The notes under the pieces: generated by a model
The model's input: only the letters and a program-made list of their open reading frames with translations
The model's database searches: none
What the model was told of the DNA's origin: nothing
Shown: in pieces, positions 5,834-64,000 of the stretch
Layout: each line of letters opens with the position of its first letter
Numbering within the stretch: position 1 is the first letter of the stretch
Assembly (NCBI GenBank): GCA_976226885.1
Contig: OZ320315.1
Location: forward strand, 97,216,001 to 97,280,000
Length of the DNA stretch: 64,000 nt
Direction of reading: 5' to 3'
From: Iphione sp. A-MEVVRFRX5
Lineage: Eukaryota
Made by a program: the position numbers and the translations under genes

Positions 5834-5837
5834 TATC

Positions 5838-7681
5838 TTACTCAGTCGGAGAATCTGTTGTTTGTAATGTCGATCTAACCTTCTCTAAAATCAATCCCAG
5901 CCAGTTACCCCCAGTAGTCATCGGTTTTGATAAGTCAAGGTTACGAAGAGTCACGCCTACCCCCCAACTATTGTCCAATGAGGCTTTGTAGATTTTTCTG
6001 TTGCCTGTCGAAAGGAGGGACGTCTTGCTTGAGTGACACTGACTATATTTGGATACCAGTATGCTCGTCATTCTCTTGCTTTTGAGCGTCAGTCATTTTA
6101 GTGGGGTCGGTTAGTGCTTTTGTTTTTCTGGGGATTAGTGTTGGGTCATCGATCAGCATGATCTCCTCGGCCAGGTCAGTGCATCCAAAAGCAAGCGCTT
6201 TGACTGATTGAAAAGCCTGTTCGGCTGAGGTATACTTGATGCCATTGTGTGTGAAATTGTCCTTGCACATGTTTGATAGTGGGTGGTTTTTACCAAAGAA
6301 AGCAATGCTATTGTCATTACGTTTCTCCGATGCCTTTTCAAGCGAGAACCCGGGTGGTAATCGGTGGAGTGTTCATGGTGTGTATGTTGTACCTGATATA
6401 GTGAGTTTGTTGCCTTTCAATTTAGTGTCAAATTTCAAGGCTTTAGCTTATTGAAATACGCTCCGCAATTCACCCCTACTTACTCGGTCTGCTTGTGGGA
6501 GATCCTCATTTATCCAGACCCCCCCCTCAGGGTCTTCAGGTTTGCTCTCCCAATTAATATTCTGGAGCGAGTGTTTTGTTTTATGAATTTAACTTTTATG
6601 TCCCTGACTCCGTTGCTGTTTTTTGTACCGATTCGGAAACATGGGTCCATGTTACCTGCTGCAAATAAGGGGTCTGCCAGAGTGAAGACTTCGCTCACCC
6701 GTGTCCATAACCATTGTGGAGTTTCCCCTCCTTCTTCTGAGAGACCCGAGATTATTAAATTCATCATTTTGCTATCCCGCTCAAGCTTGTCCACCATCCC
6801 TCTCATTGATTTAATCTCATTGCACATTTGGGTCTGCTTCAGTTTTCCACACCCACCAGTAATGGGATTGTCATCGAGTTTCGCCCGTAATTCTGCATTT
6901 TCTGCTTCAAGCTCCTCTAACCTGTCGCTTTGGGACTTTACTGCTACGTCTAATTCCACTACTTTAACTTGGTTTGCCTCTATACTTGATCTCATGTCTT
7001 CACTAACCTCTTTCATGTCTTTGACGTGAGCATTTAAGATTTCCTGAAAGCCCAGTAGGGAAGCGCTCAATTCATTTTTGATTTCATTTAGCATTCCATG
7101 TACCATTAACGAGGGGTATGTTCATTTGGACTAGAGCATTTGATTTCATTTAACATACTCAGGACATCCTCTCGCATGTTTTGGCTGACTGTGTTGTCTA
7201 GAATTGTTGGTGACCTATCTCTTGCCTTTTTCTCTTCCTGGCTATCCAAAATCGGACTGATATCTTTCCTTTTGAAACTGCACACTGGGGTCCCCAAAGT
7301 AGATACCTCAGTTTGCGTGTAAATTTCACGGCTTCCACAACGAGTTTTTATTGATAATTCCTCATTATGTTCTGTAGTCTCTTTTTCCTCTGATAACTTA
7401 GTTTCTGTGGTACCCTTTTGTGTTTCTGATTTGTTTGTGTTTTTGAGACATTCTGAGCCGGTCGAGTGTTGTGATTGTTCGTTAGATATTGATGTCTTGT
7501 CTGTTGTGTCAGTCAGTAATGCTTTTGGTATTTCTATGGAGTTTTGCTGCTGTGAAATACTACTGTCTGTCCTCTGTGTGTACATCTTGACTGGTTTCGC
7601 TGCAAGCACTTCATCTGCATATGCCAGTGCAGCGTTGACTGAAGTTTCTAAATATAGACTCTCGTCATATGCTAGACTCAC
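5838..7681 (-). pseudogene. LINE ORF1: disordered N-terminus, coiled coil, RRM-CTD and C-terminal NADAR domain, frameshifted
   Basis: Coiled-coil heptads, then MMNLIISGLSEE...FRIG...DIKVKF (RRM). NADAR motifs at about 5860-6330: YTSAEQAFQSVKA, LDNSWGVG, GGNWLGLILEKVRSTL. Confidence 0.85.
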
Positions 7682-10599: not shown

Positions 10600-11420
10600 G
10601 AAACAGAAGAATATTACATTATGGTTTAGACAATTCTGCACGAATCTCTTGCATTAGTAGTCAATTTCAGCCTTGGTCAGGTAGAGATTTTTCAACGATT
10701 GGCCAGCCCCAAGGAATTTGTCCCAGCTAGCTAGGATTATAGCTTTACCTACAGTTTTCATTAGAGACTTCCTTGCTGGCATATTATGAGAGAATTTTGC
10801 AAATAAACCCTCTCGCAGCACCCCTTCCATTTTCTTTTCCCAATCCGCAGATGGTGCACACTGGTTACCAAGTTGACGGACCATGAAGGGAGTCCGGGCA
10901 AGATTCGACCTTCAGTTTCCTTTATACAGGTTTGTTCTATACTCAGACTAGACAGTAGGCAGGACGATGTGTCATAAGTGTACTGAATGCCGTCAACTCT
11001 CAGAGTGAGCCCTCGTACAGTAGCTTTTGATCCTTTCTCTCGGGCCAATTCAGCAATCAGGTTCAGATGCCTATTTTTCGCTTGACTCGCCTCTGGTATA
11101 TCTTCCTTCAAAAAGACCCCACGAGTATAACCTGAGAAACGCGCTAAAATTGGCCTGCCACGCTTGGAGGGTTTTCCTATTCGAGTAGCTGAATGAAGAG
11201 AGTCCGAATTGTAGTGGGGATCAATTTTGCTGAAAATTTCATTCACCATGTCCCACGACGTTGTCTCATTTTCCTTCAAATCTTCTATTATCAAATTGTG
11301 TCGTCTTGCATCCAGTTCAAGGCCAAGGTTATATAATCTCCGATTCAAATCGCCCTTATACTTCGCCATACCTTCAAGTTTATCATTTATGGACTTTTTC
11401 CAGGTGTTTTCACCAGACAA
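10600..11420 (-). pseudogene. LINE ORF1 RRM-CTD plus the C-terminal half of NADAR (internal deletion)
   Basis: RRHNLIIEDLKE...ATRIGKP...PILARF and FLKEDIP, then WEKKMEGVLREGLFAKF...WDKFLGAG...LLMQEIRAEL. Confidence 0.8.
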
Positions 11421-11682
11421 AATCTTATCAACTGACTGGAATATTAATACAATAATGTATGAGAATCCAGTTTACCAACACATTTACAGAAGATGATAAC
11501 TACCCTGTATAAGGGTACGGGGTGATGATGATACTTGTAGGCTATGTTTCAGCGATAATAAATATGTCAGTTACACTGTGTGATAGTAGGTGTGATTTTT
11601 CAAAAATAGGACGGTAAGAATGATGCTATTTTTTAGTCAATTTAACTATTTAGTGGGTAATGACCAAGATGTCTAGGAAACG

Positions 11683-15153: not shown

Positions 15154-15583
15154 TCAACAATAGTTACAAATGTACTCATTTATCATTTCTGCCATCTTCA
15201 GTTGATATTCACGTTTTAAGTGGCAGCCGTCCTCAAGTCTGTTATACCTGTGTCGATAATGACCCTTATCACAAGTAGTAGCAACGATTAGGTGTGTACC
15301 TGTCACCCATAGGCTTGTTCCGAGTTCAAGAGCTACCTCTAAGGTAACATATCGTGGGCAAAGATACTATGAGTGGATTGTTTCAAGAATTTGTATAACT
15401 TAGTAAAGTCGTTGCCACCTGGGATGATAATTACAAATCCTGGCAAAGTCTTTTGGTTTCTCTTGCGAGCTACTGAAAGTCCCTACCTGGAAAATACGCT
15501 ACCTTCGCCCTGGTACAGCCGAGACGAGAAAGATCAGCAAAAATTGTCCTACCGTGACTGTTTGACACTAGTAAGATGTCCAT
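15154..15583 (-). pseudogene. SGNH hydrolase ORF, internally deleted
   Basis: Manual translation across frameshifts gives MDILLVSNSHGRTI, YFPGRDF, IIPGGNDFTKL and YNRLEDGCHLK. Confidence 0.75.
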
Positions 15584-15779
15584 CTTTAACGTTGGTCTGC
15601 TTTACCGACTTCGTCTCGCACTTGGCTGGCACTGTGAAGACAGGCGTCAGATGGACTTGGGTCACCAGAAGACCTGGTGCAAGCACAGACTGCAGTGGAG
15701 TTGGGTAGCAGGCCCTGGTAGAAACTTGCGGATGCACTCCCGGTGTCCCGAGGGTACAGGAGCAAGTATCACGTATCAG

Positions 15780-15950
15780 TTGACAGGAGATCTAGAGGCT
15801 CGCAGGGTCGGCAATATGTTTCTCCCGATGGTAGGTGAGACAGAAGCACGTATAGGTTGATGGAAGGTATGGCTCTCCAGGGCATCAATATGTTTCCCCA
15901 AGCTCATCAGGCCGAGCACGTAGGAGGAATGACCTCGCCCTAGGAGGAAG
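15780..15950. repeat. Degenerate ~70-75 bp tandem repeat upstream of the hydrolase ORF
   Basis: CAATATGTTT(C)TCCC occurs at about 15812 and 15886, and (G)CACGTA recurs about three times at similar spacing. Confidence 0.5.
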
Positions 15951-16256
15951 ATATCAGTAGATGTTAAAGCAGCTTATCGTACTGAGGTAACTCGATCACA
16001 CAATGCACAGGTAAGGCCCCCAGGCGAGTCCAACCTAAGTGGCTGCAAGCTTAGTTGTGAGACCATTTTGGTTGACATCTTCACCACTCACCTCAATAAT
16101 TTTCTTCAGGGCTGTACCACCTAGATTACCAGAGTCTGTTTGAATTGTCTTTCAGGCTATTACTACTTTGAAGTGACAGCATACCTGTATCAATTATCAC
16201 TGGTGTAGCCCTAGGTGGGAGAGGATATATGCCAGCATTCTGTTCTTCAGTAATGG

Positions 16257-18494
16257 TTGAAAGTGGTATCGACATCAGCATGGCATGGTGGGCGACCTTG
16301 TCGCCATTCCATGAGTCGATTGTTTTCCTTTTGTCAATTTCTCATGCGCCCCACCCGTAAACACGTCTACTCACGTGCAGCCATCACATATATATATATA
16401 TATATATATTCTCTGCATGATGCCCGGTGTGTTGATGATCCTCCTGCAAAATGTGCACCCACCTCTGACTACGGATGAGCTAGTGGTTTAGCACCCCTGT
16501 TAGGTGCTGTAGCTGTAGCTGTTTTGTGGTGGCCCTGGGGCGCCCCGTAAAGAACTTTAGGTCCCTGTGGAGGGCGTCGAGTTTGTGTTGAGGGAGGCGG
16601 AGACACATATCGATCGTATCAATTTCAATGCCCAGATAGATGCAGCGATTGGAGGGGGATAACAATTTCCCCCAGCTGATGAAAAAAACCTAGGCAGCGA
16701 AACACATTGATGGCCATGTGTTGATGTTGGAGGCTTTCACTGTACGTAGGGCCCACAATGAGGAAATCGTCCAGGTAATTTGCACTTGATGTCCAAGCAA
16801 CATAGGCATTGACCCAAGAAGCAGCTCACTCGGTGGAACAGGTATGGGGCCATTTTGGCATCGAAGCATAGACAGTTGTCACGTTGGAAGTATTCTTGAC
16901 CCCCGAAGTGCCATCTGAGGCTTTGTACTTCCCTGTCACTTGGGGGGATACAAATGGAGCGATATGCAGCTTTGATGTCAATGCAGCACGCGAAATGCCC
17001 CGGGCCAATGAGAGGAGCCACATCGTCGATCCTGGAGAAGGAAAAGGGTTCGCCACAAGTGTCCATGTAGTTGTTGATGGATATGCCCTTCCGCCTGCTG
17101 CAATCGGTGATGCCCCATCCTTTCTGGGGACCGCCTCCAGGGCGTGGATGTTCCGCGGATTGGTATTCAGAATGGAAAGTTTGTCTTGGATTTCCTCCTG
17201 AAGGGGTTTGGAGAGGAGCGTAGCATTGTTGTTTTAACACGACTCGTAGTTGTTTACCTCATAGCTTGAAATATTGGATCCCGGATCAAGGATCCGGAAG
17301 CCATAACAGACCCCGTCCAGGAGGTAATGCATATCGGGGTCCTTGTTGGCCTGCAGTTCATGAAGCCAGGTGTGTGGAACCATCTGTGAGCGGATGCCCC
17401 CCCACATAATGAGATCCGGGGAGCCAGGCCCCCTGAAGGCTTGGGTCTGTCAGGATGTGTCGACATTTGGAGAGGAGACAACACTAGTGTAACCCCTGGA
17501 TCTCATAGTAAAGCTGGTATCCTCCATTAGCGAGTGTGCCCCTTGTCCTCCTCCTCCTTGAAGGGCAATCGATCACCTTGTGTTTGCGGCAGGAAGAACA
17601 GATGTGGAGGCGGTGGCAGTTAGTGATAAACACTCACGTTTGGTGTACTGCCAACACAAGTCGACAGGGAAGAAGTCCCATTCCCTGTTGCCCTGATGCC
17701 CCTCCCTTGGTCTGCTTACATGGAAATCAACTGCTAGGAAGTATGCTGTACTGTCTGTATCAGCCACTATCCAATCATTGAGTTTGCCCGTTGAGTACTT
17801 TTGTTGTTACTGCATGTTCATAACAAGCTAGGCCTTCTGGCAAATATCCCTTTTTAGATCCTTTGAATGTGACAAATCTCAGGTGGTTAAGGTAACCATG
17901 AAAAGGTAGGGATCATTTTACAATATAAACAAGCACACTTAACATTCCATATTATAAGAGCTTGGCCAGTTGAAGCTTGTCGTGCGAGACATCTCCGGGA
18001 ACGTGTAAAACGGCTTGCATTCTTCTTTTTCCCGTTGTTGTGGGCTTCGATGTCGATAGATGAATTATCCTCCAGGAAGGGAGAAGTCCGGGAATTTGAA
18101 ACCTGGCTCAGAGAGGGTGGTTTGTTGATAGTTCTCTAGAACCAGTTGCCGATCGTATGGCTGATCTTGCTTGGACCAGCTCCTGCAGCCTTTTCCATAA
18201 ACGCTGTTCCTCTGTTTCTTGTTTAGCTGCCAATTTCGATTCCTACTCTGCAATCCGTTTTTGTAACCAAGACAAGCATTCCACTGAGCCTGGGGCCAGT
18301 TCCGAGCTGTCTGGGACTTCCTTGGGTTTGTCGGGAAAGAGATTGGAATCTACAATACTATCCCTTAAACCCATGCCTAGGCCTTCCCCAAGGAGCCCAT
18401 GATTTGAATTTGGTGAGGTGGTGTCTACATTTTTGTACCTGTAGGGGGTAAATGGCATTCCCCACATGCACTGCAGTTTACACTCATCACTCAA
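16257..18494 (-). mobile_element. DIRS-order retrotransposon fragment (gag, RT, start of RNase H)
   Basis: WLHELQANKDPDMHYLLDGVCYGFRI, IDIKAAYRSICIPPSD, NYLDDFLIVG and CIYLGIEIDTIDMCLRLPQHKL. Confidence 0.85.
16387..16409. repeat. (AT)n microsatellite
   Basis: Direct reading. Confidence 0.9.
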
Positions 18495-22675: not shown

Positions 22676-22849
22676 ATTTCATTTTTAACATTTTAACATT
22701 TTTATTGAGCATAGGTATCACATATACAATATGTGGTTTTTCAATCCAATACTCAGCCCATTTACATAATATCTTTATTATATGGCTGAAACAACTCAAA
22801 AGACACAACTTCTTAGATATCTTTTGACAGACAATCTAGGCAAATCCTT

Positions 22850-25503
22850 AACATTAGATGGAAGATCATTCCAAGATTTCTGTAGTTGTACCAGGCAGCT
22901 TTTCCTATACATCTGTTTTTGGTTTAGAAACCAATATCTGTACACCTGATCCCACTCTTGTTGATGTAGCTTTCTTCACCTGGCAAAGATTTAAACAGTA
23001 TAGATCATTCATTAGCATTGTTCCAAGATATTTCATTCTATATGCTAAAAGACCTTATCTGTTATGCTTTAGCCACTCTTCAACCTCTCTTGTACTAGAG
23101 TATCGATATGGAACACACCGACGTATCGATCTATACCAAGCCTTAATTAGCCTGTTTAGATCTTGTTGTGTTGCAGAAAATAAAAAGTAAATCCCAAAAT
23201 CTATATGCAGTTGTACAAAAGAAATGAAAAATCTCTTCCTATATTCTGGGCTTAGATATTGACGACATCTTGATAATAAATAACTTACTCAATTTATTGA
23301 TTTTATTTTCTGATCTACAAAAAACTTAAAATTTAACCTGTTATCAATATGATACCCTAAAAATTTAACATTTTCCACCTGATGTAAAATCTTCCCATTT
23401 ATTGTAACATCTAACTGGAAACCTCTCGCCTTCCCAAAACACATCACATTTGTTTTGGTGGTATTAATTGACAGACCATTATTGTAACACCAGTTTCCCA
23501 ATATACCCAGCATGTATTGCAATTTCTGCCTTAGGCCCCAGGCACTTACTGCACTTGCAACAATGGTGATGTCGTCGGCATATACAATCAGCTCACACGG
23601 ATGACTCATTTCAAAAATGTCGTTTAACGCAATTATAAACAATATTGGCCCCAGCACGGAGCCTTGGGGGACACCAGTTGATATAAGCAATTTATTTGAA
23701 GTAGAATTGTTACACCTTACCTGTTGTACTCTATTTGTTAAGCATGAAGAGAACCAGGAACAGATATTGGCTTCAGGAACAGATATTTTTTCCAAAGCCA
23801 TATTTCCACAGTTTACTTACTATCAGCTCGTGATTTAACATGTGATTTGGACATGTCGAGATATGTAGCAGCTACATATCTACCATCGTTAATCCCTTCC
23901 AACAATTTATTTAATATATAAGTCATATAAGCTGTCCCAGTACCCCTTCCCTTCCTGACACCGAACTGATTTTTATGAAATAGATTATTTCCCTCCATAT
24001 GATCCATTACTTGCACAGCTACTACTCTTTCCAATATCTTTTATGGAGCTTGAAGAATAGAAATGGGCCTATAATTCACAGGACTTATCTTACTTTGCTT
24101 CTTGTGTAATGGTGTTATTTTTTATTCCTTCCAAGCCGTAGGGATGACACTATCCCGTAACGAAATAAAGACTAATTTTCAAAGCATCTTTCAACATTTG
24201 CATTGATATACCCTGCAGCCCTGATGGTTTTGTCACCTTTAGTGCACAGATCAATTTATAGATTTGTGTATAACCCTGTGCCCCTTCATATGATTTAGGG
24301 CACATTTCTTTGCTAATGTCCCTAACACTTTCCACAAAGAATTTATTTAACTCATCACAGACCATATCTCCTTCAACTAATTGATTCCCAAATTTTAATC
24401 TTAGATCAATATGCTGATCTTTCATCTTACCAAATGCTGTTCGATTTATCAGGTCCCACATCTTGTTACTATTATCCTCACAATTTATAAACTGATTTCT
24501 GATGTAATCTCGATTCGACTCCTTAATCAGTTTATTTACTTCATTTTGGTAATAGCAGTACATTCGTTTATAATCTATTATTTTCGATTTGAGCCACCTT
24601 TTCCTATAATAATCCCTTTCACGTATATATAGTAAAGCTTTGTGTTTAAGACTAGGTAGTGATTTCGATCTAGCCAGTTTAATGACCATTGGGCAGAGAT
24701 TGTCCAAAACTTCTGTTACATTGGATGTCCATCGTAGCCACATATCATCAACTGTCGGCTCAAACTCAAAATTCCAGTTACAATTTTCTAATGAATCCCT
24801 AAACCTACCAAAACTGTAGTTTTTTGTATTTCTGGCAATGTTTGTAATCGACGTAAACAACTAAGTGGTCACTACTTCCATATGTCCATACTCCACATTT
24901 ACGATAATTCGTACTAGACACATATATATGATCAAGGCATCCTAAGCTATCATGAGTGCTTTTATCTATCAATTGTTTCAAACTCAGATCTAATGCAAAT
25001 TCAGTGCACTCCCTCTTCATCATGTTGTCTAAGCCAATTGACATTAAAATCACCCAAATTTTTAATTGTCTCCTCCCATACCTATTTACCCTTTTTATTG
25101 AAATATTTATTTTTTCCAATAGCTCGCTTAAGTTCCCTCCCGGTGGCCTATATACTAAATATATCAAATGATATTTTCGTTTCCCAGGTTTTATTTTAAC
25201 ACATAAAACTTCACCACATTTCTCCATATGGCACTCCTCATCTAGAACTTCAACATGATAGTCCTTCCGTATGTAGAGCATAACCCCCCCTCCCCGTTTT
25301 TTACCCACTCTATCCCTGTCTCTATCCAATCGTACCACCTTGTACTCAGGTATTAATACCATACTGTCTGGGAATATTGGATTTAACCAAGTTTCATTTA
25401 TTCCTAAAATATCAATATTATGTATCCTTAATAATTGTGTTATTTCAGAGAGTTTGCCCAGAACACTCCTACAGTTCCAGGCAGCAACCCGAAGCACAGT
25501 CAT
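22850..25503 (-). pseudogene. LINE ORF2 (APE-RT) with multiple frameshifts and stops
   Basis: MTVLRVAAWNCRSVLGK, GINETWL, GCLDHIY...SSDHL, QFGVRKGRGT, GVPQGSVLGP, YADD, VKFLGYHID. Confidence 0.92.
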
Positions 25504-25641
25504 TATATGTATAATAACTGAAATGTTGGCAATCACCTAACCTGAGAGAACAACATAAAATAAAAATATCTGTAATTCCATAAACTCAAACAGCTTAATA
25601 TATGTAAAAGAAGAAATAATTTTAAATTGACATTACCAGTC

Positions 25642-26289
25642 TCACTCAGAAAGTCCAAACATAACTGCGACCGCTGTGTCTATACTGTAGCCCCAGTCTT
25701 GTAGGGCCTCATCCGTCGGGTGGCAACCATCGTATAGATGCAGGAAGTTCGATTTGTATCTTCCTTTATCAACACGATGCACCGGTAGTGCTGTTGAGGG
25801 TGTATATACATTGTTTTGTTTGTTAATATCAAGATACACATTATTTAAGACCCTCACACATTTGGTTAGCATACGTTGATTTTCAGACGTTGCAGTCATA
25901 GGGCTATATTCAAACAGGTTAATGCTACATATTGGCATATAACCGATTCTACCATTATAGCCCAACTTTATCAACCTTGCTTTCAATTCTTCATTGAGTG
26001 CTCTCACCCAGAGTTCCAGCAGATGTGGATCATCATACACTAACGACAATTGCTTGTTACTCGGGTCCCTGATACTTAAATTATTTACTCCTAAAAATGA
26101 AAATATTAGTGAATAGTAGCGGCAATCATGTTCCCTTAACCACTTAAAAATGTACTCTAACTTTGGCCCTGACTTGGACACAACTTCAATAGTAATGTTT
26201 CTATGCCAAAACCAATTTAAATTAATGTAATTTCTCAAATGACGACCCCGAGAATCACAAACAATTAAAACTGAGTGATGCATTTTCAA
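25642..26289 (-). CDS. Stand-alone SGNH/GDSL-type hydrolase (esterase), intact 215 aa
   Basis: Block I VCDSRGRHL (nucleophile Ser), block II SKSGPKL, block III FLGVNNL, block V LYDGCHP (Asp and His). Confidence 0.85.
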   Translation of the reverse strand: MKMHHSVLIVCDSRGRHLRNYINLNWFWHRNITIEVVSKSGPKLEYIFKWLREHDCRYYSLIFSFLGVNNLSIRDPSNKQLSLVYDDPHLLELWVRALNEELKARLIKLGYNGRIGYMPICSINLFEYSPMTATSENQRMLTKCVRVLNNVYLDINKQNNVYTPSTALPVHRVDKGRYKSNFLHLYDGCHPTDEALQDWGYSIDTAVAVMFGLSE

Positions 26290-26782
26290 TACTATTATAG
26301 AAAAACAAGATATAATAGCACTTAGCCGTATCCTAAAAAAATGTTGATGTTACGTAGCTATCCTTCTGAAAAAAGAAATGTACACATTAATTATCAATAC
26401 TCATATTGTATCAAGCTCAATAATACATCCAACGAGACAAACATATGGCTAGAGATATATTTTATCGGACAGACTCTTGCCCAGAACAATAATTTTTGGA
26501 CAGACACTTGTCCAGATCATTTTACCTAATCAATTTCAACATACAATATCTCTGAAAAATATGCCATATATGTTCAACGTTGTACAAAAGGAAAAAATTA
26601 ATAGTAATGTGTGCTACCGGCAGACCATTGCCAGTGACTTGTAATCGTACTTTTCTTCTTATTTCGTTGCTTTTAGGCAGACACTTACCATAAAGCATAC
26701 ACTAGCATTGCCGTCTCACCAGGTATTCGAATCTTCCCAAGTAAGACGGTCTGAAAAGCACATAATAAACACAAAAATGTCA

Positions 26783-28280
26783 TTAAATATTGTCTCTGAC
26801 CTCCATTAATACATTTCCATATTCGTTTGATCCCGGAAATTCCATTTTCATCAGGTTTTTGTCATTAAAGCCTACTCCACTCCCAATCCAGTCATCTCGA
26901 GTTGCAAAGACAAGCCTTTTGGTACCGGTACTCTGCAACGCCGCACGTGATATCTCATTTTGCTGAAACTTACATATCAATCCAGTTCGTAGAACAGAAC
27001 GTTGAATTTTGCACCAGTCCTCAGTCGATTTGCATTGGCTACCCAAGGCTCGTACTCTCTTGGGATTCTCCTCAAGCATAATACGATGTCGGAGAATTTC
27101 GTCGCCTGCAAGTTGTGCCTTTTCTGATTGAAAATGGTGCTCACTGGATTCGTACCTGTCCCCGCGGATTGTGAACGGTGTGTGCGAATATGACGAGAGT
27201 TGACTGTGTTCTTCTCGTATTACGTAAGCTGTTTCAGTCTCCTGTACACATGATTGATCCAAACTCAGATCAGCGGGTATACAGTCCAGATGGTCATATC
27301 CGAAGTCAACGCCGTCAATACGAATGCTCACCCCTCTTACAGACGCTTTCATGCCCTTACTCCGTGCTAAATTTGCTATCATCTGCAACTGAGTATGTTT
27401 TTCTTTTAAACTGCTTGGAATATCTTCATTGAGGTAGACTTGGCGACTTGTATTGCTCTTACGTAATATCGTTCGTTGTGCTAGCAAGCTATTTCGAGCT
27501 TCTGGGCAGGACAGACGAACCAGTATTGGCCTGGGGTTTTTTCTCGGTTTACCTAGTCTTGTTGCTGATAGAACAAAATCCAGCCCGAAATTTGGATCAA
27601 TTTCGTGGAAAACACCCACCACTTGATCCCACGTTGTTACACTATTATCCTCTTTCAGGTTGTCGACTATCAGATTCTGCCTTTTACTTTCCAATTCAAT
27701 CCCTTCAACTTTTCTTTTCAAGTGGTCATTTTGTTGTTCTAAAGCATACACCCTAGTAATTGTTGTACACATAGTGCGTTCATTCTCTTCCACTTTCTGA
27801 CTCATATCATGTTTCCACGTCTTATCTTGTTCAGATATCTTATTCAAATCTACGACCAGGTTTGCAGTTTGTGACTCGAGAGATTTAACAGTTTGTTCCA
27901 AAGTAACCAGTCTCTGCCCAACGTTTTTGCTCATTTCAAGTTGTTGTTGAACACCAATTAGTGCTTGTTTAATTTCAAACTGGTTTTCAAACACTAATTT
28001 CAGTGCTTCCCTCATATCTAATTTGTCAAAGTCAATATGAGTTTCATTATCATCAGGCACCGATTGGGTGGTATTTGTACCTTGTATCCCACTGTCACCT
28101 ACTGTCTGATTCAGTTCTTGAATAGAAATATTTGTTGCATTACCTGCTCCTTCCTGTATCTGAACTGGCGTTGCTTGTGGTGGTAGAGGGGCTGCTCCTG
28201 ATTGTTCCTCATGTGTCAGTATTTTCGACGGAGTAGAGAACACAGGTGACGACCCTGGCATTGATCTTGATATATCCAGC
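26783..28280 (-). CDS. LINE ORF1: coiled coil, RRM, CTD and NADAR fusion, uninterrupted (~495 aa; extreme 5' end replaced by DIRS sequence)
   Basis: Heptads, then KRQNLIVDNLKED, ATRLGKP...PILVRL and YLNEDIP. NADAR motifs: YESSEHHFQSEKA, KFQQN, LQSTG, RDDWIGSG, GSNEYGNVLMEVRDNI. Confidence 0.9.
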
Positions 28281-39314: not shown

Positions 39315-40001
39315 TTAATTCCTGTGTGCTGCCTTTATGAATTTGTTGGCCCAGTAGATTGTTGTTTCCATTGTTGGGTGTAGGCCGTCATACAGCTTAT
39401 TAAAAAATGCCCTGTATCTCCTTTTCTTTCCATGATAACCATGGACTGGAGCTTCAACCCATGCAGATGTCACATCTTCATAGTGATTAGCCTTGATTAT
39501 TAAGTTGTTAATTTTCTTGATACCATTGATAAATGAGCGTTGGGCCTCTTGTGTAATTGGCTCATACTCATTACCTGTCGTTACATACGCATTGTACTTA
39601 TTAAAGTCAATTGCCGTGATCGGACACCACACTATTTTGGGCAGGTCACTCATTTCCCTCATACGTTGTGTATGCATACGAAAAAGACCTGAATAATATT
39701 GAAAAATGTCATCAGAGGCTATGAATCTCGGTACAGATCTCATTGAGGGTGATTCTCGTTTTACCAGATCACATATTCCACTAAAAATAAATATCAGGTG
39801 GAACTAGGTAATGCTTGAGTCATTGTAAATGTCCTTTGTAATGCGATGAAGGTCACCTCCAGGAAATACCCTGACCTCATACTTGGTATTAGACTCATCA
39901 ATGTTGTTTAGTGTCTCCTCCAGACCTCTGCCTCTCGAGTCCGATAGGATCAGTACCTGGCTTGGCTTAGGTGGGTATGGTGGCTCCGCCTGTAGTTACA
40001 T
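39315..40001 (-). pseudogene. SGNH hydrolase ORF with in-frame stops
   Basis: QVLILSDSRGRGL, VFPGGDL, IFSGICDL and KLYDGLHP. Confidence 0.85.
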
Positions 40002-40039: not shown

Positions 40040-41366
40040 TTAAAGGGTGTCTCTTATTTCCATCCATAATTTACCAAGGAGATTCTCTCCAGTAAATTTG
40101 TTTGAACGAAGACTTTTGGATGTTATGTTGCTACCTGCTCCTAAGAGCTTATCAATAGACGCATGGATCAGAGTTTTCTTCTCTGTGTCAATTAGAAATT
40201 GTTTTACCTCTGGATTGCTATTTGCTTTCAAGATCAGAAGTTGTTTCAATGTCTTACCATCGTATTTCTCCGTTTTTTTCGGCTTGGGAAGTGATTCACT
40301 GATCGTTTTCACCTGTTCTGTTGTGGTTGACTCTCTGACTTGTTTCGCTAGGTCAGTGTGACCACAGCTACTGGCCTGCTTGTATACCAGGGCGTGTGTG
40401 ACCGTTGGTAATATTACATCATCGATTTTGATTGGAGACCTGTGCTCGTTTGAAAGTGGTGAATTCTCACTTTCAAAATAAACGTGTGTATTGGTCACAA
40501 TCGATTTTGCTGCTTTGAGATTCAATTCCTTAGGTAGTAAATTAATCTGAGAGTGGTGGTACTTTTTTCCATCTAATGTGATGTTAAGCCCCAAAACTGC
40601 CGATTTATATCCTTTGTGTCTCGCTAGACTAGCCAATGCTTTGAGATCCCTTTGAATTTTTATTCCATCCTGTGGTAGGTCTTCACTAAGCCACGTTGAA
40701 GACTGATTTTTCATAAGGTTAAACCTATTCTTGAAAATATCATCCCTAATTTGTACTGATACAAAATGAACAGCAATTGAACCAGGTTTACCTTTGCTGA
40801 TCTGATGCACATTAGCAATGCTTGATTCATTGAAGTTGGCAAGGATGTTTTTTAGAAGATCAGTGACCTGTTTTTTCAGGGGAACATTTGGTTTGATATC
40901 CATCCCATGAATAATAAGATTGGCCCTTCTTCCCTTTACCTCCCTGTCAAGTTGAGAGTTTGACTTCAGGTAACTGAGATTTGAGTGCTTCATTATCCTT
41001 CCTAAGCAGACTAATCTCGTTTTGTGCTGCTCTTAGTTCTGCTCTTAGGCTGTCAATTGAGGAATGAACATCAGAGAATGCAGTGGAATTATCAGATGTG
41101 TTAGACAGCTTCTTATTGTTGGTGGAAATATTTGGGGAACTTATCTGCATGGCACCATGCTCGCTGGTGTGGTCCGAGTGGTCAGCAGTTTTGTTGACCG
41201 GACTCCCCAGTGTGGGCGACCAGTTGTTGGTGCAACAGCTACCCTCGGGCATCGAATTATGGACCGACTGGTCACTCTTACAAGTCGATTGGTCACTCTT
41301 GGCCCTTGTGGTTTTCTTTTTTCCAGCCATTTTCCACCTTGTTTTGGAACTGTTTGCAGTCTTCAC
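40040..41366 (-). pseudogene. LINE ORF1 (coiled coil, RRM, CTD, divergent NADAR), one frameshift near 40990
   Basis: RRANLIIHGMD and WLSEDLP. NADAR: FESENSPLSN, PTVTHALVYKQA, IDKLLGAG, TGENLLGKLWMEIRDTL. Confidence 0.87.
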
Positions 41367-46089: not shown

Positions 46090-49000
46090 TAGAATAGAAT
46101 AGAATAGAATAATGCTTTATTCACATCTCTTGTCATACAACATGAGGTCTTCCGGCGAGGCCGCAGGGTGAATAGGTAACTTATATACATTAATGACATT
46201 TCTACAAGTATAATAGTACATGTCAAAAATTTGGTAATAAATTGGATCAAAAATGCACATACAGAGAGTAGTACAATTCAATACTATGGTATATGGAGTA
46301 GTAGCTGTTTTTTGGAGTCAGTGCGTAAATGCAAGGAGTAATGCAGTTTGACTCTCTTACTCGATTACGAGTCATCTCCGTGCTTGTTCTTAAGCATGGT
46401 CTTGAATCTATGTGAACATGGCTCTGCCCTATGGGGAGCATCAAGGCCATTCCATTTTTCTACACTACAGTACCAGAAACAGTTCTTTGTCTTGGCAGAC
46501 CTTGGCTTATATAGCTTCAATGTTGGCCCTAAACTGGTTCTTGTCAATCGTCTCTTCTTTTCTGGGGGACAGATACCTAACTGGACTAGTTTATATACTA
46601 GCATGATTCCTTGCGTTGTTCCACGTTCTTCCAGCGAGGTTATACCTAGACTTCATCTTAGGGATTTTGACGACACGGGACTTCTTGGATTACATAGTAC
46701 CACTCTTCTCAGTAAGTTGTTATATTCGATTTGCATCTCTGATACTATCTTTTGGCTTCCCCCAATTATATGACACAGGCAATAGTAAAAAATTGGATCA
46801 ATGAACGCTCTAAACAACCATGCACGATCCTTAAGCTTTAAAACATTGGTGACTCTGGCTAGGCCATAACCTCGCTGCCTAGCAATCCTCCTAGTGTGTT
46901 TTACTTGTGCTTTCCAGGTCAGACCTTCATCTAATTGATATCCTAGGAAAGTTGCTTCGTGGCTCATTTCTATAGCCTTATTGTTAAGTTGCAGGTCTAA
47001 GTCAATCTTTGGTCCTTTTCCGAAAACTATGTAATGACTTTTCTGGGGATTCAGGACCAAACCGACCCTTTCACACCACTTTACTACATCTGTCAGACTT
47101 CGCTGTAATTTTAGCCATAGACTCATTAAGTTCGGTGACTGACAGTATATCGTGATGTCGTCTGCGTACAACATCACTTTCCCTATGGCTAGGGCTTTTG
47201 GTAGTGAATTCATGACTATACTAAAGAGAAGAGGGCCCAAGTGGCTCCCCTGGGGAACCCCTTGGGCAATAGTACACAACCCTGATCTGACACCATTACA
47301 GCTAACAAATTGATTGCGGTTGGTTAGGTATGACACGATCCAGCTTAAGGTATGTATTGCCAATCCTGATTTAGTGAGACATTTGACAATATATCTATGG
47401 TTTACTATGTCGAAAGCGGCAGTAAGGTCTAAAAAAATGCAACCAAAATGATTCCCTCTTTTAATTACCTCTGAGCATTCTTTCATTAACAAACCCATTG
47501 CTGTTGATGTACCCCTCCCTTTACAAAAACCGTGTTGTTCACAAGCCATCTGATTGGTTACCTCTAAATATTCTGACAACTTTTCATGTACATGTCCCTC
47601 TACGATTTTTCCCATATTTGATAAAATAGAGATCGGCCTGTAATTCTCCTTTTTGTCAGATGGTTTCTTTTTTAACAACAGGCTAACCCTCACGGTCTTC
47701 CATGCCGGTAAGAAATAACTATGTGAAAGCCCTATATTTACCACTGCAAGGAGTCAGTAAACACATGATGGTGTCCTTGAGGACTATAGTCGGAACACCT
47801 TCTATACCACTTGATTTTTGTTCATTTAGTCTTATAGCTCTCCTTCGTATTAACGGAACATCCCAGCTCGACACCTTGGGTGTATTTTTGACAATCACTA
47901 ACTTACTGGATGCAGCTTTACCAAGCATTGCAGCCTCCTGTATGAAGAAATCATTTAGGATTTATGGACTATCGTTAGGCTCGAGACACACCCCCCCTGC
48001 TAGAATGATCGGATCCCTGGCCTTCATGTTACCTAACACTGTTTCGTTTATCACTCCCCAATACTCCTTTGGAGTTCTGCACTGATCCAATTTTCTTTGA
48101 GTGTACTCCCTCTTTGCTCGCTTAACCAGGACAATTACCATTTTTCTATAAAATTTTCCAATTCGAAATGAGTCAGTACTCCCCGTCTGAACGGGGAATT
48201 GATACTTTCTCTGTAATATTACATATGCCACCGAGCACAATCACATAACGGAAAAAATGATTCCTGCATAAAGAGATTGCTGAATCAACTAAATATTCAT
48301 ATCCCTTGCCTGGAAACACACACACTGCTGTTGCACTGTCACTCAGCAAATCCAGATTGTATCGTAACCACTTACCACGGCTTTGTAGCCGGGTAAAGAC
48401 TTAGAGTTCCTCAGGGCTGCACATGTACGTATCCCGGTGCTCCAGTATTCGTCCTTAGTGAGAACCAAAATATCGCGTTGTCCCGAGCTCTGTAACTCCG
48501 TCAGTAATTTCTTGTCCTGGAAAAGCTTTTCACGAGCCAGTGATAGCATTACCTCATCCATTGAGTCTTCCCATGTCTTCGTACAAGGTATTTTCTGTGC
48601 ATGTTTTCCAATTTTACCTGGTGTCTTTGCTTTCACAATCTCCTGCGCTATTCGATCTTGATTACAATGCCTCGCCTTTTCCCAACTGTATGCATGCATC
48701 ACAGAACGAATATAGTGACCCTTCCACAGGAAATCGCTATGGTAGCCTGGTGCTAACTGGTCATACTCAAAGTCGACCAAGAAAGCATTGTTACATAATG
48801 CCTCGTCATGCTCGGGTGGTAGTGTACGCACCTTGGGAGTGTTAGATTCTTCGATACGTATCGAGCCGCCTCGTCCAAGTACCATTCTAGCACCATCCGT
48901 TGCTTGAATCACTTTCGTTGGCAATGGTGGGAACTCTATATCCTCATCTTCAGATGCAGAATCTATATTACTCTCAGATTGACTGATCACATCCATATCC

Positions 49001-56509: not shown

Positions 56510-57960
56510 AAATGAGTAACCCCCATAGTCACGTCCTATACCATATGCTCGATCTAGTTTTTGTTCACCCTTCTTTACCACAAAGTAGACTGGAAGATGG
56601 TCACTTGAAGAATTTGTTTATGGTTAGTGTAAATGTGATCCAGACAGAGTCAGGTTATGTTGTCTCATTATGTCTAGACATTCAGTTTTTCCTACTGATC
56701 CCTTTAACCAGTCCACGTTCATGTCTCCCAGTAAGAGTTACAACTTGGTTGTGATATTTGGCTACATATTTGTGCTAAACTACCTCAAACCTTGCCAGAT
56801 AGCTGGTTAGGTTTCCCCCAGGACTTCTATACAGGGCTGTAATATACTGCCGCTTTCTTTTCCTGGCTTCACTCGAAGATAGAGAATGTGACCGTCAATA
56901 TCTTCTGATGTGTAGTCCTCCAGTAGTCTGACTCGACAGGTCACTTCAAACCATACCCAGGCATATTTCTGGACTTCATACTTATTGACGCATCATTACC
57001 AACACTGCTGAAATTAATCAGTTTGTGATGTTACTTCATGTTGTACTTCCTCCATTACCTTTCCCGCTAGGTTGTACCCCGACCTAGTTCCGTCCTGTAG
57101 TTTCCTATCCCACAAAGAATATTCAGTGCCATAAATGTAGTCCTGACTGGCCTCAATCAGTAAGGTGTTGTCCGTACCAAGCAACTACCACTTGTAGTCA
57201 GCACTGCTTTTAGCTTCGCACGAACTCCTTCCTTCAGAATTTCCTCTTGCATTGATTTCCAGTCGTGCAATTTTGTTATTTGGTAAGTTAACCCCCTTTG
57301 CCCTCCTGCCGCTCGATTCCGACTGAATCTCTTCTCTGATGTCGTCCCGTCCATGCAGCCGAGCACACTCTGCAGCGATCCACTGATCTACAGAGTTGTA
57401 GGTGTCCCCTCCCAGCAAGAAGCAAACCGGAGTCTCATTGGATAGAACGCAGTGTGGACCACTAAAAATAGTCGCCTTTCCCACCTGTCATTTTGCCGTG
57501 TCCGCAAGAGAGTCCAGACGATTGAGCCCCCACCAGGTATCAAGTTCGACCTCATTAAAAACACTCCGTTTCTCACATCTTCACCAATAAGCTTTACTAA
57601 TATTGGCCTTGAACCCTTTTTCGCCGTGCCTACTCTAGTTGCTCCCAACAGAGCGTCACTGTAGTAAAACTCATGATTGATCCGTGATAGAGGATCATTC
57701 ACCCTCTCCCAGGTGTCCTCATATTGATGCTACGACTTCGAATATCCAGATTCAGTATCGACCTGTTATACTTGCTGCGTGTTGGTCTGAACGTTGCCGG
57801 TCGTTGTACGCTCTTTCTTGGCTCTCTCTTCCTGAAACATGACAGATCTCTAATATGAGTTTTGAGGTCAGTGAGCTCAGCGAGCTCAGACATGGTCCTC
57901 TCCAGTCTATCCGCGACTTAGGCCTCAGGTTCTTGTTAGGAGCAGGTGTGCCGGTCAATT
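56510..57960 (-). mobile_element. LINE remnant: ORF1 (coiled coil, RRM, NADAR) joined to an internal APE fragment
   Basis: LGATRVG...RPILVKL. NADAR: FSGPHCVLSN, YNSVDQWIAAECA, G.NLAGKVMEEVQHEV near 57040. APE: VKPGKRK...YRSPGGNL, LLGDMNVDW, CLDHIYTN at 56510-56960. Confidence 0.8.
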
Positions 57961-62800: not shown

Positions 62801-64000
62801 TTAAAGCGGCCACTTCGAATATGATACGAGTTAAAAAAAGAAGTAGAAGAAGTATATAGATAGAGGATTATGGTCGATAGGCTAATAAATGGTGGTAGGT
62901 GTCATCATAATTTAATTAAATCAATTTGTAACATTAGCTATGCTCCTAGGCAGCAATTCTGGTACTGTCGTCGTGGCTAGATCTTAGAGAAATTAACGCA
63001 AACTGAACATGAGTGCAATGGCATTACATATACTGTACCCCCAGTCCTGCACAGCCAAGTCACCGGGGTGACAGCCATCATAGAGTAGAGCGAATTTTGA
63101 ACGGTAGCGTGTCTTATCCCATCTGTGTATCGGTAGGGCTGTAGCTGGAGTAAATACATCATTGTTAGCATTTAATTGTCGAAACACATCATAAAAACAA
63201 TATTATTCAAAACAGATTGAAAAGTCCTTGTCGCAGTTAGTGGGCTGTAGACAGCAAGATCTATACTAACAATTGGTAGATATCCTACACGGGCACCTAT
63301 ACCCCACCTCCTGAATCTTGCACACAACTCTTGATCAAATGCAGTTACCCATAGTGCCCAAGTCTTTGTCATCCTGAAGTAGTGATAGTTTCTTACTATG
63401 CCTATCACAATGGCATAGGTTGTTAATACTTAACATTATTAAAATAAGGTTATACTTGCGACAATCATTCTCAGCAGCCCAGTCAAACACGTAGTCCAGT
63501 CTGGCACCAGGACGATGCATAAACCATTGAGTGTCTATATAGTTCAACAGGTGCCTACCGCGAGAGTCACACAATATCAGAACTGAATACAATTATGCCA
63601 GATAACAACAACGTGGTTTACAAAATTGAAAATTAAGAGGTTAGTGTAGAGAAATTTAGAAAAAGGCACAATATCAGAGAGATACAACACAGTACTTTCA
63701 GTGATATGGCTGTGAGTAATGGGCAGCCAGGCAGGCAATTGTCCAGTATAAGTTGTTGACTTGTAGTTGCCTGATGTATCCGACTTCCACACACGTGCCA
63801 GTTCAGTCAGTCAGAGTGACCAGGTCAAGGTTGACAGTCTAGAAAAGACCTAATTATAATTAGCACTATCATTGAACCTTGGGCAGACACTTGCCACCAT
63901 AGGTCAAGGTATGTAACAACAAATCATAATATCTAAGCCCGATGGGGTAGACACTTACCATAAGCGAGCACTACAGTGTTATCCTATCAGTAATGGTAGA
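59823..64000 (-). mobile_element. LINE with hydrolase ORF, APE-RT and a (TTTGA)n tail; ORF1 expected beyond the right edge
   Basis: ORF2 62799 to 59931: MTHLRIAAWNCRSMLGK, SDHY, QHGFCKGRG, DFSKAFD, GVPQGSILGP, YADD. AATAAA plus (TTTGA)x4 at 59823-59854. The spacer motif is shared with the 26.6-kb spacer. Confidence 0.88.
62993..63592 (-). pseudogene. SGNH hydrolase ORF, frameshifted
   Basis: VLILCDSRGRHLL, MLSINNL and LYDGCHPGDLAVQDWGYSI; close paralogue of 25642..26289. Confidence 0.88.

What the first reader, a model, noticed from the sequence alone, without database searches (positions are those of the whole stretch)
26783..28280. LINE ORF1 proteins fused to a NADAR (YbiA/DUF1768) domain, in six diverged copies
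Seen: an uninterrupted ORF runs from a coiled coil through an L1-ORF1p/Tnp_22-type RRM-CTD directly into a domain with NADAR signatures (SSEHHFQSEKA, KF.QN, L..TG, D.WxG.G, G.N..G..LMEVR). The same C-terminal domain ends ORF1 at about 5860-6330, 10600-10890, 40040-40500, 48343-48780 and 57030-57480, with a possible remnant at about 16100. The copies are very different in sequence, so the fusion is old and belongs to a lineage rather than arising by chance. Established: NADAR proteins are N-glycosidases; they remove ADP-ribose from guanine in DNA (DarT1 antitoxins), and YbiA/COG3236 acts on riboflavin intermediates. Known accessory domains of CR1/L2 ORF1 are PHD, zinc knuckle, RRM and esterase; I know of no NADAR-bearing LINE ORF1. 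Inference: the element may carry its own ADP-ribose eraser or reader in the RNP, much as RNA viruses use macrodomains against host PARP-family defences.
Basis: partly seen in the sequence, partly recalled or inferred. Interest (0 to 1): 0.93.

Follow-up and report, generated by a model that had tools for sequence, protein, structure and literature searches.

The report
LINE ORF1 protein carrying NADAR domain
A family of jumping genes (LINEs) in this animal genome has an ADP-ribose-processing NADAR enzyme domain on the end of its RNA-packaging protein. The fusion is real, old and widespread but barely described, and most copies here have lost the key catalytic residue.

Summary
On the minus strand, 26783-28261 is one uninterrupted ORF1. 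It encodes a disordered N-terminus, a long coiled coil, an L1-type RRM and CTD, and a C-terminal NADAR domain (Pfam PF08719, E 5e-26). The AlphaFold2 model (pLDDT 86) matches solved NADAR/YbiA structures and the human L1 ORF1p trimer.

Six diverged copies lie in the window, all on the minus strand. The supposed remnant near 16100 is an ORF1 N-terminal piece, not NADAR.

The element is a ~5.6 kb three-ORF LINE: ORF1-NADAR, a free-standing SGNH esterase ORF, then APE-RT. It ends in AATAAA plus a short tandem repeat. That makes it CR1/L2-like, not L1/Tx1.

The fusion is widespread: 1320 cluster representatives at E<=1e-10, linked to CR1-like ORF2 with or without the esterase ORF, and in one locus to an L1-type ORF2. 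Across the family the NADAR active site is among the best-conserved columns. In this window, five of six copies replace the catalytic Glu (Phe in the intact ORF).

It is not unknown. A 2025 paper notes NADAR in ORF1 of Repbase Tx1 LINEs of the Pacific oyster. The scan's first readers also flagged this architecture at many other places in the same genome. The function, a nucleobase ADP-ribose eraser or reader on the LINE RNP, remains an inference.

The parts
26783..28261 (-). ORF1 of the main element: 492 codons from the ATG at 28259-28261, plus the TAA stop at 26783-26785. The frame stays open upstream to 28369.
28016..28261 (-). Disordered N-terminal region of ORF1p (aa 1-82). It overlaps, in another frame, the RNase H-like end of a DIRS-like element.
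   Evidence: AF2 pLDDT below 50; flanking ORFs
27686..28015 (-). Long single helix (aa 83-192), the presumed coiled coil.
   Evidence: AF2; Foldseek match to the human L1 ORF1p trimer 2YKP/2YKO
27422..27676 (-). RRM domain (aa 196-280).
   Evidence: AF2 beta-alpha-beta-beta-alpha-beta topology; Foldseek hits to L1 ORF1p and many RRMs
27251..27415 (-). L1-type C-terminal domain, CTD (aa 283-337).
26786..27247 (-). NADAR domain (aa 339-492).
   Evidence: Pfam PF08719 E 4.9e-26; sequence matches to YbiA 2B3W at 1.6e-8 and 8BAU at 1.4e-6; Foldseek 8BAU E 3.7e-10, TM 0.70
26906..26908 (-). TTT (Phe) codon at the position of the YbiA-family catalytic Glu (E125 of the P. nicotianae NADAR). The E43, K50, W89 and D130 equivalents are kept at 27140-27142, 27119-27121, 27014-27016 and 26894-26896.
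25642..26289 (-). Free-standing SGNH/GDSL esterase ORF (215 aa; motifs CDSRG, GVNN, DGCHP).
   Evidence: AF2 pLDDT 87; 186 Foldseek hits at E<=1e-3, led by GDSL/SGNH hydrolases (top 50 listed: those plus a few designed scaffolds), incl. PAF-AH 1BWQ; Atlas lead; no Pfam hit for this copy
24805..25536 (-). APE endonuclease part of ORF2.
   Evidence: Pfam PF03372 E 1.8e-9
23082..24232 (-). Reverse transcriptase part of ORF2, broken into several frames, so this copy is dead.
   Evidence: Pfam RVT_1 at 23289-23801, E 2e-22; tblastn
22680..22704 (-). 3' end of the element: AATAAA followed by about 3 copies of a 9-nt tandem repeat.
40043..41032 (-). Second ORF1-NADAR copy, open frame. His stands at the catalytic Glu position, and the E43, K50 and W89 equivalents are also replaced.
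   Evidence: Pfam 5.6e-17
39318..39995 (-). Esterase ORF of the 40k element, with one stop. Its ORF2 is at 36296-38738 and its tail (TTA)8 at 35705-35728.
10657..11471 (-). Third ORF1-NADAR copy, with a frameshift at about 10911. It is sister to the main copy. Leu stands at the Glu position. Its esterase is at 9428-10004 and its APE at 8892-9365.
5841..7121 (-). Fourth ORF1-NADAR copy, with several frameshifts. Lys stands at the Glu position. Its esterase is at 5144-5884 and its ORF2 at 2580-4590.
48346..48801 (-). Fifth NADAR copy, truncated and rearranged. Val stands at the Glu position. An RRM fragment lies at 49159-49410 and an esterase remnant at 48176-48400.
57017..57729 (-). Sixth ORF1-NADAR remnant, in three frames. 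It is the only copy that keeps the catalytic Glu (GAG at 57152-57154).
15157..16341 (-). Deleted element: an ORF1 N-terminal remnant (16129-16341) and an esterase remnant (15157-15366), with no NADAR left. APE-RT follows at 12315-14840.
62996..63592 (-). Esterase ORF of a further element. APE-RT follows at about 60189-62901 and the tail at 59823-59843. No ORF1 or NADAR signal was found in the ~400 bases left upstream of it.

Best explanation
Shown: the feature is ORF1 of a dead ~5.6 kb copy (about 22680-28261, minus strand) of a three-ORF, CR1/L2-like LINE.
- ORF1p is a disordered N-terminus, a long coiled-coil helix, an L1-type RRM and CTD, and a C-terminal YbiA-family NADAR domain.
- A second ORF encodes an SGNH esterase.
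- ORF2 encodes APE-RT.
- The element ends in AATAAA plus a short tandem repeat.
- The same ORF1-NADAR module is found in many lineages elsewhere. It is linked to CR1-like ORF2 with or without the esterase ORF, and in one locus to an L1-type ORF2.

Inferred mechanism: ORF1p coats the LINE RNA in cis, which places many NADAR units on the RNP. In family members with the intact active site (Glu, Lys, Trp, Glu), NADAR most likely acts as an N-glycosidase. It would remove ADP-ribose from nucleobases (N2-guanine type) of the LINE RNA, the cDNA or the target DNA, countering host ADP-ribosylating enzymes. This parallels the NADAR or macro domains in polyproteins of invertebrate RNA viruses.

In this window, five of six copies, including the intact ORF, have replaced the catalytic Glu. 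These copies are probably impaired hydrolases or mere ADP-ribose binders.
For: Identity:
- Pfam NADAR E 4.9e-26 and five further copies.
- Sequence matches to solved YbiA and P. nicotianae NADAR.
- AF2 model with pLDDT 85.8 and clear domain limits.
- Foldseek: 8BAU E 3.7e-10, 2B3W 6.6e-8, human L1 ORF1p trimer 1.8e-7, each with TM about 0.7 by target.
- Esterase fold; the L008 homologue passes the Pfam GDSL cutoff.
- APE and RT downstream.
- 3' tails.

Spread:
- 4684 representatives at E<=1e-3 and 1320 at E<=1e-10. Nearly all of the top 150 align in one stretch across RRM-CTD-NADAR.
- Contigs with ORF1-NADAR followed by APE-RT.
- Identical ORF1 and ORF2 at three or more places in one assembly, which points to recent activity.

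Catalysis:
- The E43, K50, W89 and E125 equivalents are kept in about 91-98% of 172 family domains, where the median column conservation is 35%.
- These residues bind ADP-ribose or are catalytic in solved NADARs, and NADARs reverse N2-guanine ADP-ribosylation (PMC11543638).
- NADAR occurs in polyproteins of invertebrate RNA viruses (PMC9503650).

Loss in this window: codons TTT, CAT, CTA, AAA and GTT against one GAG. The main copy keeps 16 of 18 hallmark residues.
Against: - No biochemical data exist for any LINE NADAR.
- The substrate (nucleobase-ADPr, soluble ADPr derivatives, RNA-end products or a riboflavin-type metabolite) cannot be read from sequence.
- Arg79 and Arg93 of the P. nicotianae ADPr site are not conserved in the family.
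- The main copy lacks the catalytic Glu, and its ORF2 is broken, so nothing here is a working element.
- The Pfam Transposase_22 model does not match the N-terminal part; its assignment rests on a predicted fold.
- The clade name (CR1 or L2) was not tested by an RT tree with reference sequences.
- No host writer enzyme was looked for.
Confidence: 0.55

Rival explanations
1. The NADAR domain in these LINEs is a non-catalytic module. It would be an ADP-ribose or NAD-derivative binding 'reader' or a purely structural part of the RNP, at least in this genome's lineages.
For: Five of six copies in the window replace the catalytic Glu by Phe, His, Leu, Lys or Val, mostly through multi-step codon changes, while other hallmark residues are kept (16 of 18 in the intact copy). 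D171A/N at the equivalent site abolishes efficient de-ADP-ribosylation in E. coli C7 NADAR (PMC11543638). The 40k copy has also lost the E43, K50 and W89 equivalents. Unchecked scan notes report the same loss elsewhere in this genome.
Against: Family-wide, the Glu is kept in 159 of 177 aligned domains, and in all 25 Group A members checked, including all five external esterase-type elements. Such conservation at about 25% overall identity argues for catalysis. All copies here are dead or decaying, so some loss may be post-mortem.
Confidence: 0.22
2. NADAR is catalytic but acts on small molecules or RNA ends rather than on ADP-ribosylated nucleobases. Candidate substrates are soluble ADP-ribose-derived immune signals, ADPr-1''-phosphate/Appr>p from RNA repair, NAD-type caps or riboflavin-pathway intermediates.
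For: E. coli YbiA cleaves riboflavin intermediates, and the domain here is of the YbiA type. Iyer et al. propose soluble ADPr derivatives and RNA-repair by-products as substrates for many viral NADARs (PMC9503650). PMC12477816 suggests RNA processing for the retrotransposon NADARs.
Against: Fusion to a nucleic-acid-coating protein puts the enzyme on RNA or DNA rather than in a metabolic setting. For animal RNA viruses the same review favours macromolecular ADP-ribosylation. Eukaryotic YbiA-type NADAR does hydrolyse guanine-ADPr.
Confidence: 0.2
3. Artefact: a chance ORF, a host NADAR gene lying next to LINE debris, or a one-off transduction of a host exon.
For: None beyond the fact that the window is a dense TE nest.
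Against: There are six diverged copies with the same domain order in one frame. Over a thousand fusion clusters exist in public data. Downstream APE-RT is repeated in unrelated contigs.
Confidence: 0.01

Closest known systems
Tx1 LINEs of Crassostrea gigas in Repbase whose ORF1 carries a YbiA-family NADAR domain (noted in PMC12477816, Genome Biol 2025)
   Same: A LINE ORF1 protein with a YbiA-type NADAR domain. Locus L001 found here (ORF1-NADAR plus an ORF2 matching human L1 ORF2p at E 1.6e-78) looks like that kind.
   Different: The window's elements are not L1/Tx1. Their ORF2 matches L1 ORF2p only weakly (3.7e-14). They carry an extra SGNH esterase ORF and end in a microsatellite-like repeat rather than poly(A). 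The paper gives one sentence and a supplementary figure, with no structure, census or active-site analysis.
Human LINE-1 ORF1p (type II ORF1, Transposase_22; PDB 2YKO/2YKP)
   Same: Coiled coil, RRM and CTD in the same order. Foldseek E 1.8e-7, TM about 0.7 by target over about 190 columns.
   Different: About 15% identity and no Pfam PF02994 match. A 150-aa NADAR domain is appended after the CTD.
Esterase-bearing (type IV) ORF1p of CR1/L2 LINEs, e.g. zebrafish ZfL2-1 (PMC3905857; PMC4120745)
   Same: A LINE-encoded SGNH hydrolase with intact Ser / Gly / Asn / Asp-x-x-His motifs, in a CR1/L2-like element with a tandem-repeat tail.
   Different: Here the esterase is a separate ORF placed between a type II ORF1 and ORF2. 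It is not fused to a coiled coil as the only ORF1. The esterase was described as the only enzymatic function among ORF1ps; NADAR is a second one.
NADAR hydrolases: E. coli YbiA, P. nicotianae NADAR (8BAU), DarG1 antitoxins (PMC11543638)
   Same: Pfam family and fold. The Glu43, Lys50, Trp89 and Asp130 equivalents are present, and the family consensus also keeps Glu125.
   Different: The domain is fused to an RNA-binding retrotransposon protein. The main copy has Phe at Glu125. Arg79 and Arg93 are not conserved. There is no DarT partner.
NADAR or macro domains in polyproteins of invertebrate positive-strand RNA viruses, and NADAR in Pol of an Ectocarpus Gypsy lineage (PMC9503650; PMC12477816)
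   Same: A selfish RNA-based replicator carries an ADP-ribose-processing domain inside its own protein. The hosts are largely invertebrates.
   Different: The partner protein differs: an RNP-coating ORF1p rather than a replicase or Pol. Common descent of these NADARs was not tested.

Membership tests
NADAR superfamily, YbiA family (PF08719) | Match to the Pfam NADAR model above its gathering score | tested here: met
   92.4 bits against a cutoff of 35.1, E 4.9e-26. Four of the other five copies also pass.
NADAR superfamily, YbiA family (PF08719) | YbiA-like alpha+beta fold | tested here: met
   AF2 pLDDT above 95 over the domain. Foldseek: 8BAU TM 0.70 and 2B3W TM 0.69 by target.
NADAR superfamily, YbiA family (PF08719) | Conserved Glu43 and Lys50 (P. 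nicotianae numbering) | tested here: met
   GAG at 27140-27142 and AAG at 27119-27121. Kept in 162 and 160 of 177 family domains.
NADAR superfamily, YbiA family (PF08719) | Signature catalytic Glu of the YbiA family (Glu125) | tested here: not met
   Phe (TTT, 26906-26908) in the main copy. His, Leu, Lys and Val stand there in four others, and Glu only in the 57k remnant. The feature is met in 159 of 177 family domains elsewhere.
NADAR superfamily, YbiA family (PF08719) | N-glycosidase activity on ADP-ribosyl-guanine or related substrates | not testable with these tools
   Needs an enzyme assay.
Type II (L1-type) ORF1p / Transposase_22 | Coiled coil followed by one RRM and a CTD | tested here: met
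   Helix 83-192, RRM 196-280, CTD 283-337. Human L1 ORF1p trimer chains are Foldseek hits 3-11.
Type II (L1-type) ORF1p / Transposase_22 | Match to Pfam PF02994/PF17490 | tested here: not met
   No Pfam family other than NADAR at E<=0.1.
Type II (L1-type) ORF1p / Transposase_22 | Trimerisation and RNA binding | not testable with these tools
   Needs biochemistry or a multimer model.
CR1/L2-like (Jockey-superfamily) LINE | ORF2 with N-terminal APE and RT | tested here: met
   PF03372, PF14529 and PF00078.
CR1/L2-like (Jockey-superfamily) LINE | 3' end made of a short tandem repeat instead of poly(A) | tested here: met
   AATAAA followed by units of 3-9 nt, in about 3 to 8 copies, at six element ends.
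CR1/L2-like (Jockey-superfamily) LINE | RT groups with CR1 or L2 reference elements in a phylogeny | not tested
   No Repbase or Dfam reference sequences were available. Only indirect evidence: a weak match to L1 ORF2p and the presence of an esterase.
L1/Tx1 LINE | ORF2 closely similar to L1-superfamily APE-RT | tested here: not met
   Best window RT against human L1 ORF2p is 3.7e-14, and there is no APE match. L001 scores 1.6e-78 over its full length.
SGNH/GDSL hydrolase (middle ORF) | Flavodoxin-like SGNH fold with Ser, Gly, Asn and Asp-x-x-His blocks | tested here: met
   AF2 pLDDT 87. 186 Foldseek hits at E<=1e-3, led by GDSL/SGNH enzymes. Motifs CDSRG, GVNN and DGCHP. No Pfam hit for this copy, but the L008 homologue passes PF13472.

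The most novel reading that the evidence does not exclude
Invertebrate LINE RNPs carry their own nucleic-acid de-ADP-ribosylase, and some lineages carry a catalytically dead ADP-ribose reader derived from it. This would reveal an undescribed host defence that marks retrotransposon RNA, cDNA or integration sites by base ADP-ribosylation (pierisin/CARP-1-like or PARP-like writers). The element would erase or sense that mark, as RNA viruses do with macro and NADAR domains.
Probability: 0.3. Interest if true: 0.85.

Novelty: new variant of a known kind. Interest (0 to 1): 0.6.

Why it matters
ORF1 proteins of LINEs are thought of as RNA chaperones and packaging proteins. The SGNH esterase was described as their only enzymatic domain (PMC3905857). 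A NADAR domain that keeps its active site across more than a thousand diverged ORF1 clusters means a large group of invertebrate LINEs invests in ADP-ribose chemistry.

NADARs are the only known erasers of N2-guanine ADP-ribosylation, and shellfish and butterflies make guanine-specific DNA ADP-ribosyltransferases. So the fusion gives a testable handle on whether base ADP-ribosylation is used against retroelements in animals.

The repeated loss of the catalytic Glu in this genome's copies offers a natural enzyme-versus-reader comparison.

On the practical side, automatic annotation will call these ORFs 'NADAR domain-containing proteins' in invertebrate gene sets, although they are transposon genes.

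Tried and rejected
- Pfam Transposase_22 for the N-terminal part: no hit. The assignment rests on the predicted fold.
- Word-indexed search with the NADAR domain alone: nothing. No free-standing NADAR relatives were obtained, so no donor tree was built.
- Profile of the esterase copies against solved-structure sequences: only noise. The fold search settled it.
Left open.
- L1/Tx1 membership of the window's elements: rejected.
- Site-specific insertion into DIRS-like elements, because three ORF1 5' ends abut DIRS-like RT/RNase H. The main LINE is indeed nested in a DIRS-like element. But the DIRS copies are diverged, the junctions differ, and outside loci have other flanks, e.g. chloride-channel gene pieces in L006. 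Not supported as a rule.
- NADAR remnant at about 16100: rejected.
- dN/dS on NADAR: not run. The only locus pairs with DNA are either identical or saturated.
- Recent duplication as the source of the copies: rejected, since there is no DNA similarity.
Full report
**Observation.** The minus strand carries an open frame at 26783-28369 (528 codons). From the ATG at 28259-28261 it encodes 492 aa. Pfam finds one family, NADAR PF08719, at aa 386-528 of the 528-codon frame (E 4.9e-26, 92 bits, cutoff 35). tblastn with the two halves of this protein finds further copies, all on the minus strand.

Pfam confirms NADAR in five more places:
- 40043-41032 (5.6e-17)
- 48346-49155 (7.9e-11)
- 10657-10911 (5e-9)
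- 5841-6092 and 6046-6372 (2.4e-12 and 2e-5; two halves of one domain split by a frameshift)
- 57017-57184 (2.4e-4, weak)

An HMM built from 60 family members recovers exactly these six and nothing else. Both halves of the 57k copy score near 1e-8. The 'remnant at about 16100' matches only ORF1's N-terminal region and has no NADAR signal.

The copies are 22-38% identical as protein and show no DNA similarity to each other. They are separate, old lineages.

**Anatomy of ORF1p.** An AlphaFold2 model with a 60-sequence alignment has mean pLDDT 85.8. It shows:
- a disordered stretch, aa 1-82
- one long helix, aa 83-192
- an RRM, aa 196-280
- a small alpha/beta domain, aa 283-337
- the NADAR domain, aa 339-492

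Foldseek against solved structures puts P. nicotianae NADAR 8BAU first (E 3.7e-10), then E. coli YbiA 2B3W (6.6e-8), then nine chains of the human LINE-1 ORF1p trimer (from 1.8e-7). TM by target is about 0.7 for the top six hits (0.58-0.71 across the trimer chains). By sequence the domain matches YbiA at 1.6e-8 and 8BAU at 1.4e-6. The Pfam Transposase_22 model does not match, so the L1-type assignment rests on the predicted fold.

**The element.** Downstream on the minus strand lie three further parts.
- A 215-aa ORF at 25642-26289. Pfam misses it, but it carries the motifs CDSRG, GVNN and DGCHP. Its model (pLDDT 87) gives 186 Foldseek hits at E<=1e-3. The listed top 50 are almost all GDSL/SGNH hydrolases, including PAF acetylhydrolase, plus a few designed scaffolds.
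- APE at 24805-25536.
- RT at 23082-24232, in broken frames.

The element ends at 22680-22704 with AATAAA followed by a 9-nt repeat. Five other LINE ends in the window have the same build, with units of 3 to 8 nt.

The esterase ORF recurs after ORF1 in the 40k, 10k, 6k and 48k copies and in the 63k element. ORF2 matches human L1 ORF2p only weakly (3.7e-14 for the RT, nothing for the APE). Together with the esterase and the repeat tail, this points to a CR1/L2-like LINE, not L1/Tx1. I could not run an RT tree with reference elements.

**Spread.** An exhaustive HMMER search of 1.84 billion cluster representatives gives 4684 proteins at E<=1e-3 and 1320 at E<=1e-10. Almost all of the best 150 align in one stretch from the coiled coil or RRM to the end of NADAR.

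Contigs fetched for ten of them show ORF1-NADAR in four settings:
- Five different loci have an SGNH ORF and a CR1-like APE-RT (L003, L004/5, L006, L007, L008). The middle ORF of L008 passes Pfam's GDSL cutoff.
- L002 and L010 have a CR1-like ORF2 without an esterase; the P0006 and P0010 contigs show an APE-RT or RT ORF2 by Pfam, with no esterase ORF called.
- One locus, L001, has an ORF2 matching human L1 ORF2p at 1.6e-78 over 700 residues.
- One assembly holds identical ORF1 and intact 964-aa ORF2 at three or more places, which points to recent activity.

A tree of 66 ORF1 proteins splits into two groups (SH-aLRT 99). All esterase-type elements, including three window copies, fall in one group, and the L1-type pair sits on a long branch in the other. 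That was a quick search on saturated data and is only a sketch.

**Active site.** In P. nicotianae NADAR, ADP-ribose is held by E43, K50, R79, W89, R93, E125, D130 and W133. E125 defines the YbiA family. The equivalents of E43, K50 and E125 are catalytic in E. coli C7 NADAR (PMC11543638).

I mapped these residues through the HMMER alignments onto 186 aligned ORF1-type domains and fragments. Counts below are out of 177, the domains with a residue at the Glu columns:
- E43 equivalent kept in 162
- K50 equivalent kept as K or R in 160
- W89 equivalent kept in 170
- E125 equivalent kept in 159
- D130 equivalent kept as D or N in 156

These columns are among the most conserved of 145, where the median top-residue frequency is 35%. 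R79 and R93 are not conserved.

All five external esterase-type elements keep Glu, Lys or Arg, Trp and Glu. The window differs. At the E125 position the copies read:
- main copy: TTT, Phe
- 40k copy: CAT, His
- 10k copy: CTA, Leu
- 6k copy: AAA, Lys
- 48k copy: GTT, Val
- 57k remnant only: GAG, Glu

The main copy keeps 16 of 18 hallmark residues, so the loss is specific and not general decay. The 28k and 10k copies are sisters, which leaves four independent lineages without Glu out of five. Against a family background of about 10% non-Glu, I estimate that this would arise by chance with probability of order 5e-4.

**Mechanism.** That ORF1p of this fold coats LINE RNA is established for L1, not for this family. 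That NADARs reverse N2-guanine ADP-ribosylation, including a eukaryotic YbiA-type enzyme, is established. That the LINE domain does so is inference.

The inference is supported by active-site conservation and by the parallel with NADAR and macro domains in polyproteins of invertebrate RNA viruses (PMC9503650). Guanine-specific DNA ADP-ribosyltransferases exist in shellfish and butterflies (CARP-1 and pierisins) and are candidate writers. I did not look for them here.

The Glu-less copies in this window are more likely impaired enzymes or ADP-ribose binders.

**Novelty.** The searchable literature holds one relevant statement. PMC12477816 (2025) reports NADAR in Pol of an Ectocarpus Gypsy lineage. 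It adds that ORF1 proteins of several Repbase Tx1 LINE families of Crassostrea gigas also appear to hold YbiA-family NADAR domains. Searches for NADAR or DUF1768 together with ORF1 or non-LTR found nothing else. The ORF1 classifications list coiled coil, RRM, CTD, CCHC, PHD and esterase, but not NADAR (PMC4120745, PMC3905857).

So the kind is known in passing for Tx1. What is not described in what I could search:
- the CR1/L2-like three-ORF form with a separate esterase
- the scale of the family
- the fold model
- the active-site pattern and its loss here

First readers of this scan flagged the same architecture at many other places in this genome, and loss of catalytic residues at two. I saw those notes after reaching the same points myself, and they are unchecked.

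**Surroundings.** All 13 LINE fragments and all the DIRS-like pieces seen in the window lie on the minus strand. The main LINE is nested in a DIRS-like element. RT and RNase H-like parts lie at 29.3-28.2 kb, and tyrosine-recombinase parts at 22.4-21.4 kb.

Noticed in passing
window 1-64000: All 13 LINE fragments and all DIRS-like pieces detected lie on the minus strand. No plus-strand hit appeared in a two-strand tblastn. Such a one-strand TE nest could be a piRNA-cluster-like locus or a large intron with antisense insertion bias.
   Followed up: partly
window 28212-29330 and 21479-22397 (minus): The main LINE is nested inside a DIRS-like retroelement in the same orientation. RT and an RNase H-like DAS..GWG motif lie 5' of ORF1, and tyrosine-recombinase motifs (HSLRRSAATH...GGW...Y) lie 3' of the LINE tail. 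Other LINE 5' ends at 49.2k and 16.4k also abut DIRS-like RT pieces.
   Followed up: partly
window 22680-22704, 35705-35728, 46090-46111, 59823-59843, 19123-19149, 965-984 (minus): Diverged LINE families share one 3' end design: a ..AATAAA box, a few bases, then 3-8 copies of a family-specific 3-9 nt unit (ATTCT, ATTTG, ATT, AAATGTTAA, AAATTTCA, TTCAA).
   Followed up: yes
window 30129-30518: A 48-bp tandem repeat in 8 copies (96% matches) is open in several frames on both strands. It lies upstream of the DIRS-like element.
   Followed up: no
window 44237-45512: Satellite-like array: a 357-bp higher-order unit built of 27-bp subrepeats, about 3 copies, 97% matches.
   Followed up: no
P0004 (1075 aa, ENA contig of 13 kb): The best-scoring hit of the exhaustive search is a protein of at least four, probably five, tandem NADAR domains (five matched stretches). 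At least four of them lack the catalytic Glu (Asn, Phe, Cys, Cys). It has no RRM part, so it is a different NADAR repeat protein.
   Followed up: no
window 45496-46038, 58967-59206: Two further SGNH esterase remnants with no recognisable ORF1 upstream, probably from 5'-truncated or rearranged elements of the same kind.
   Followed up: no
L006 282-3346 (Logan ERR14368249): In another organism a three-ORF NADAR LINE lies next to chloride-channel (Voltage_CLC) gene pieces on the opposite strand, as if inserted antisense in an intron.
   Followed up: no
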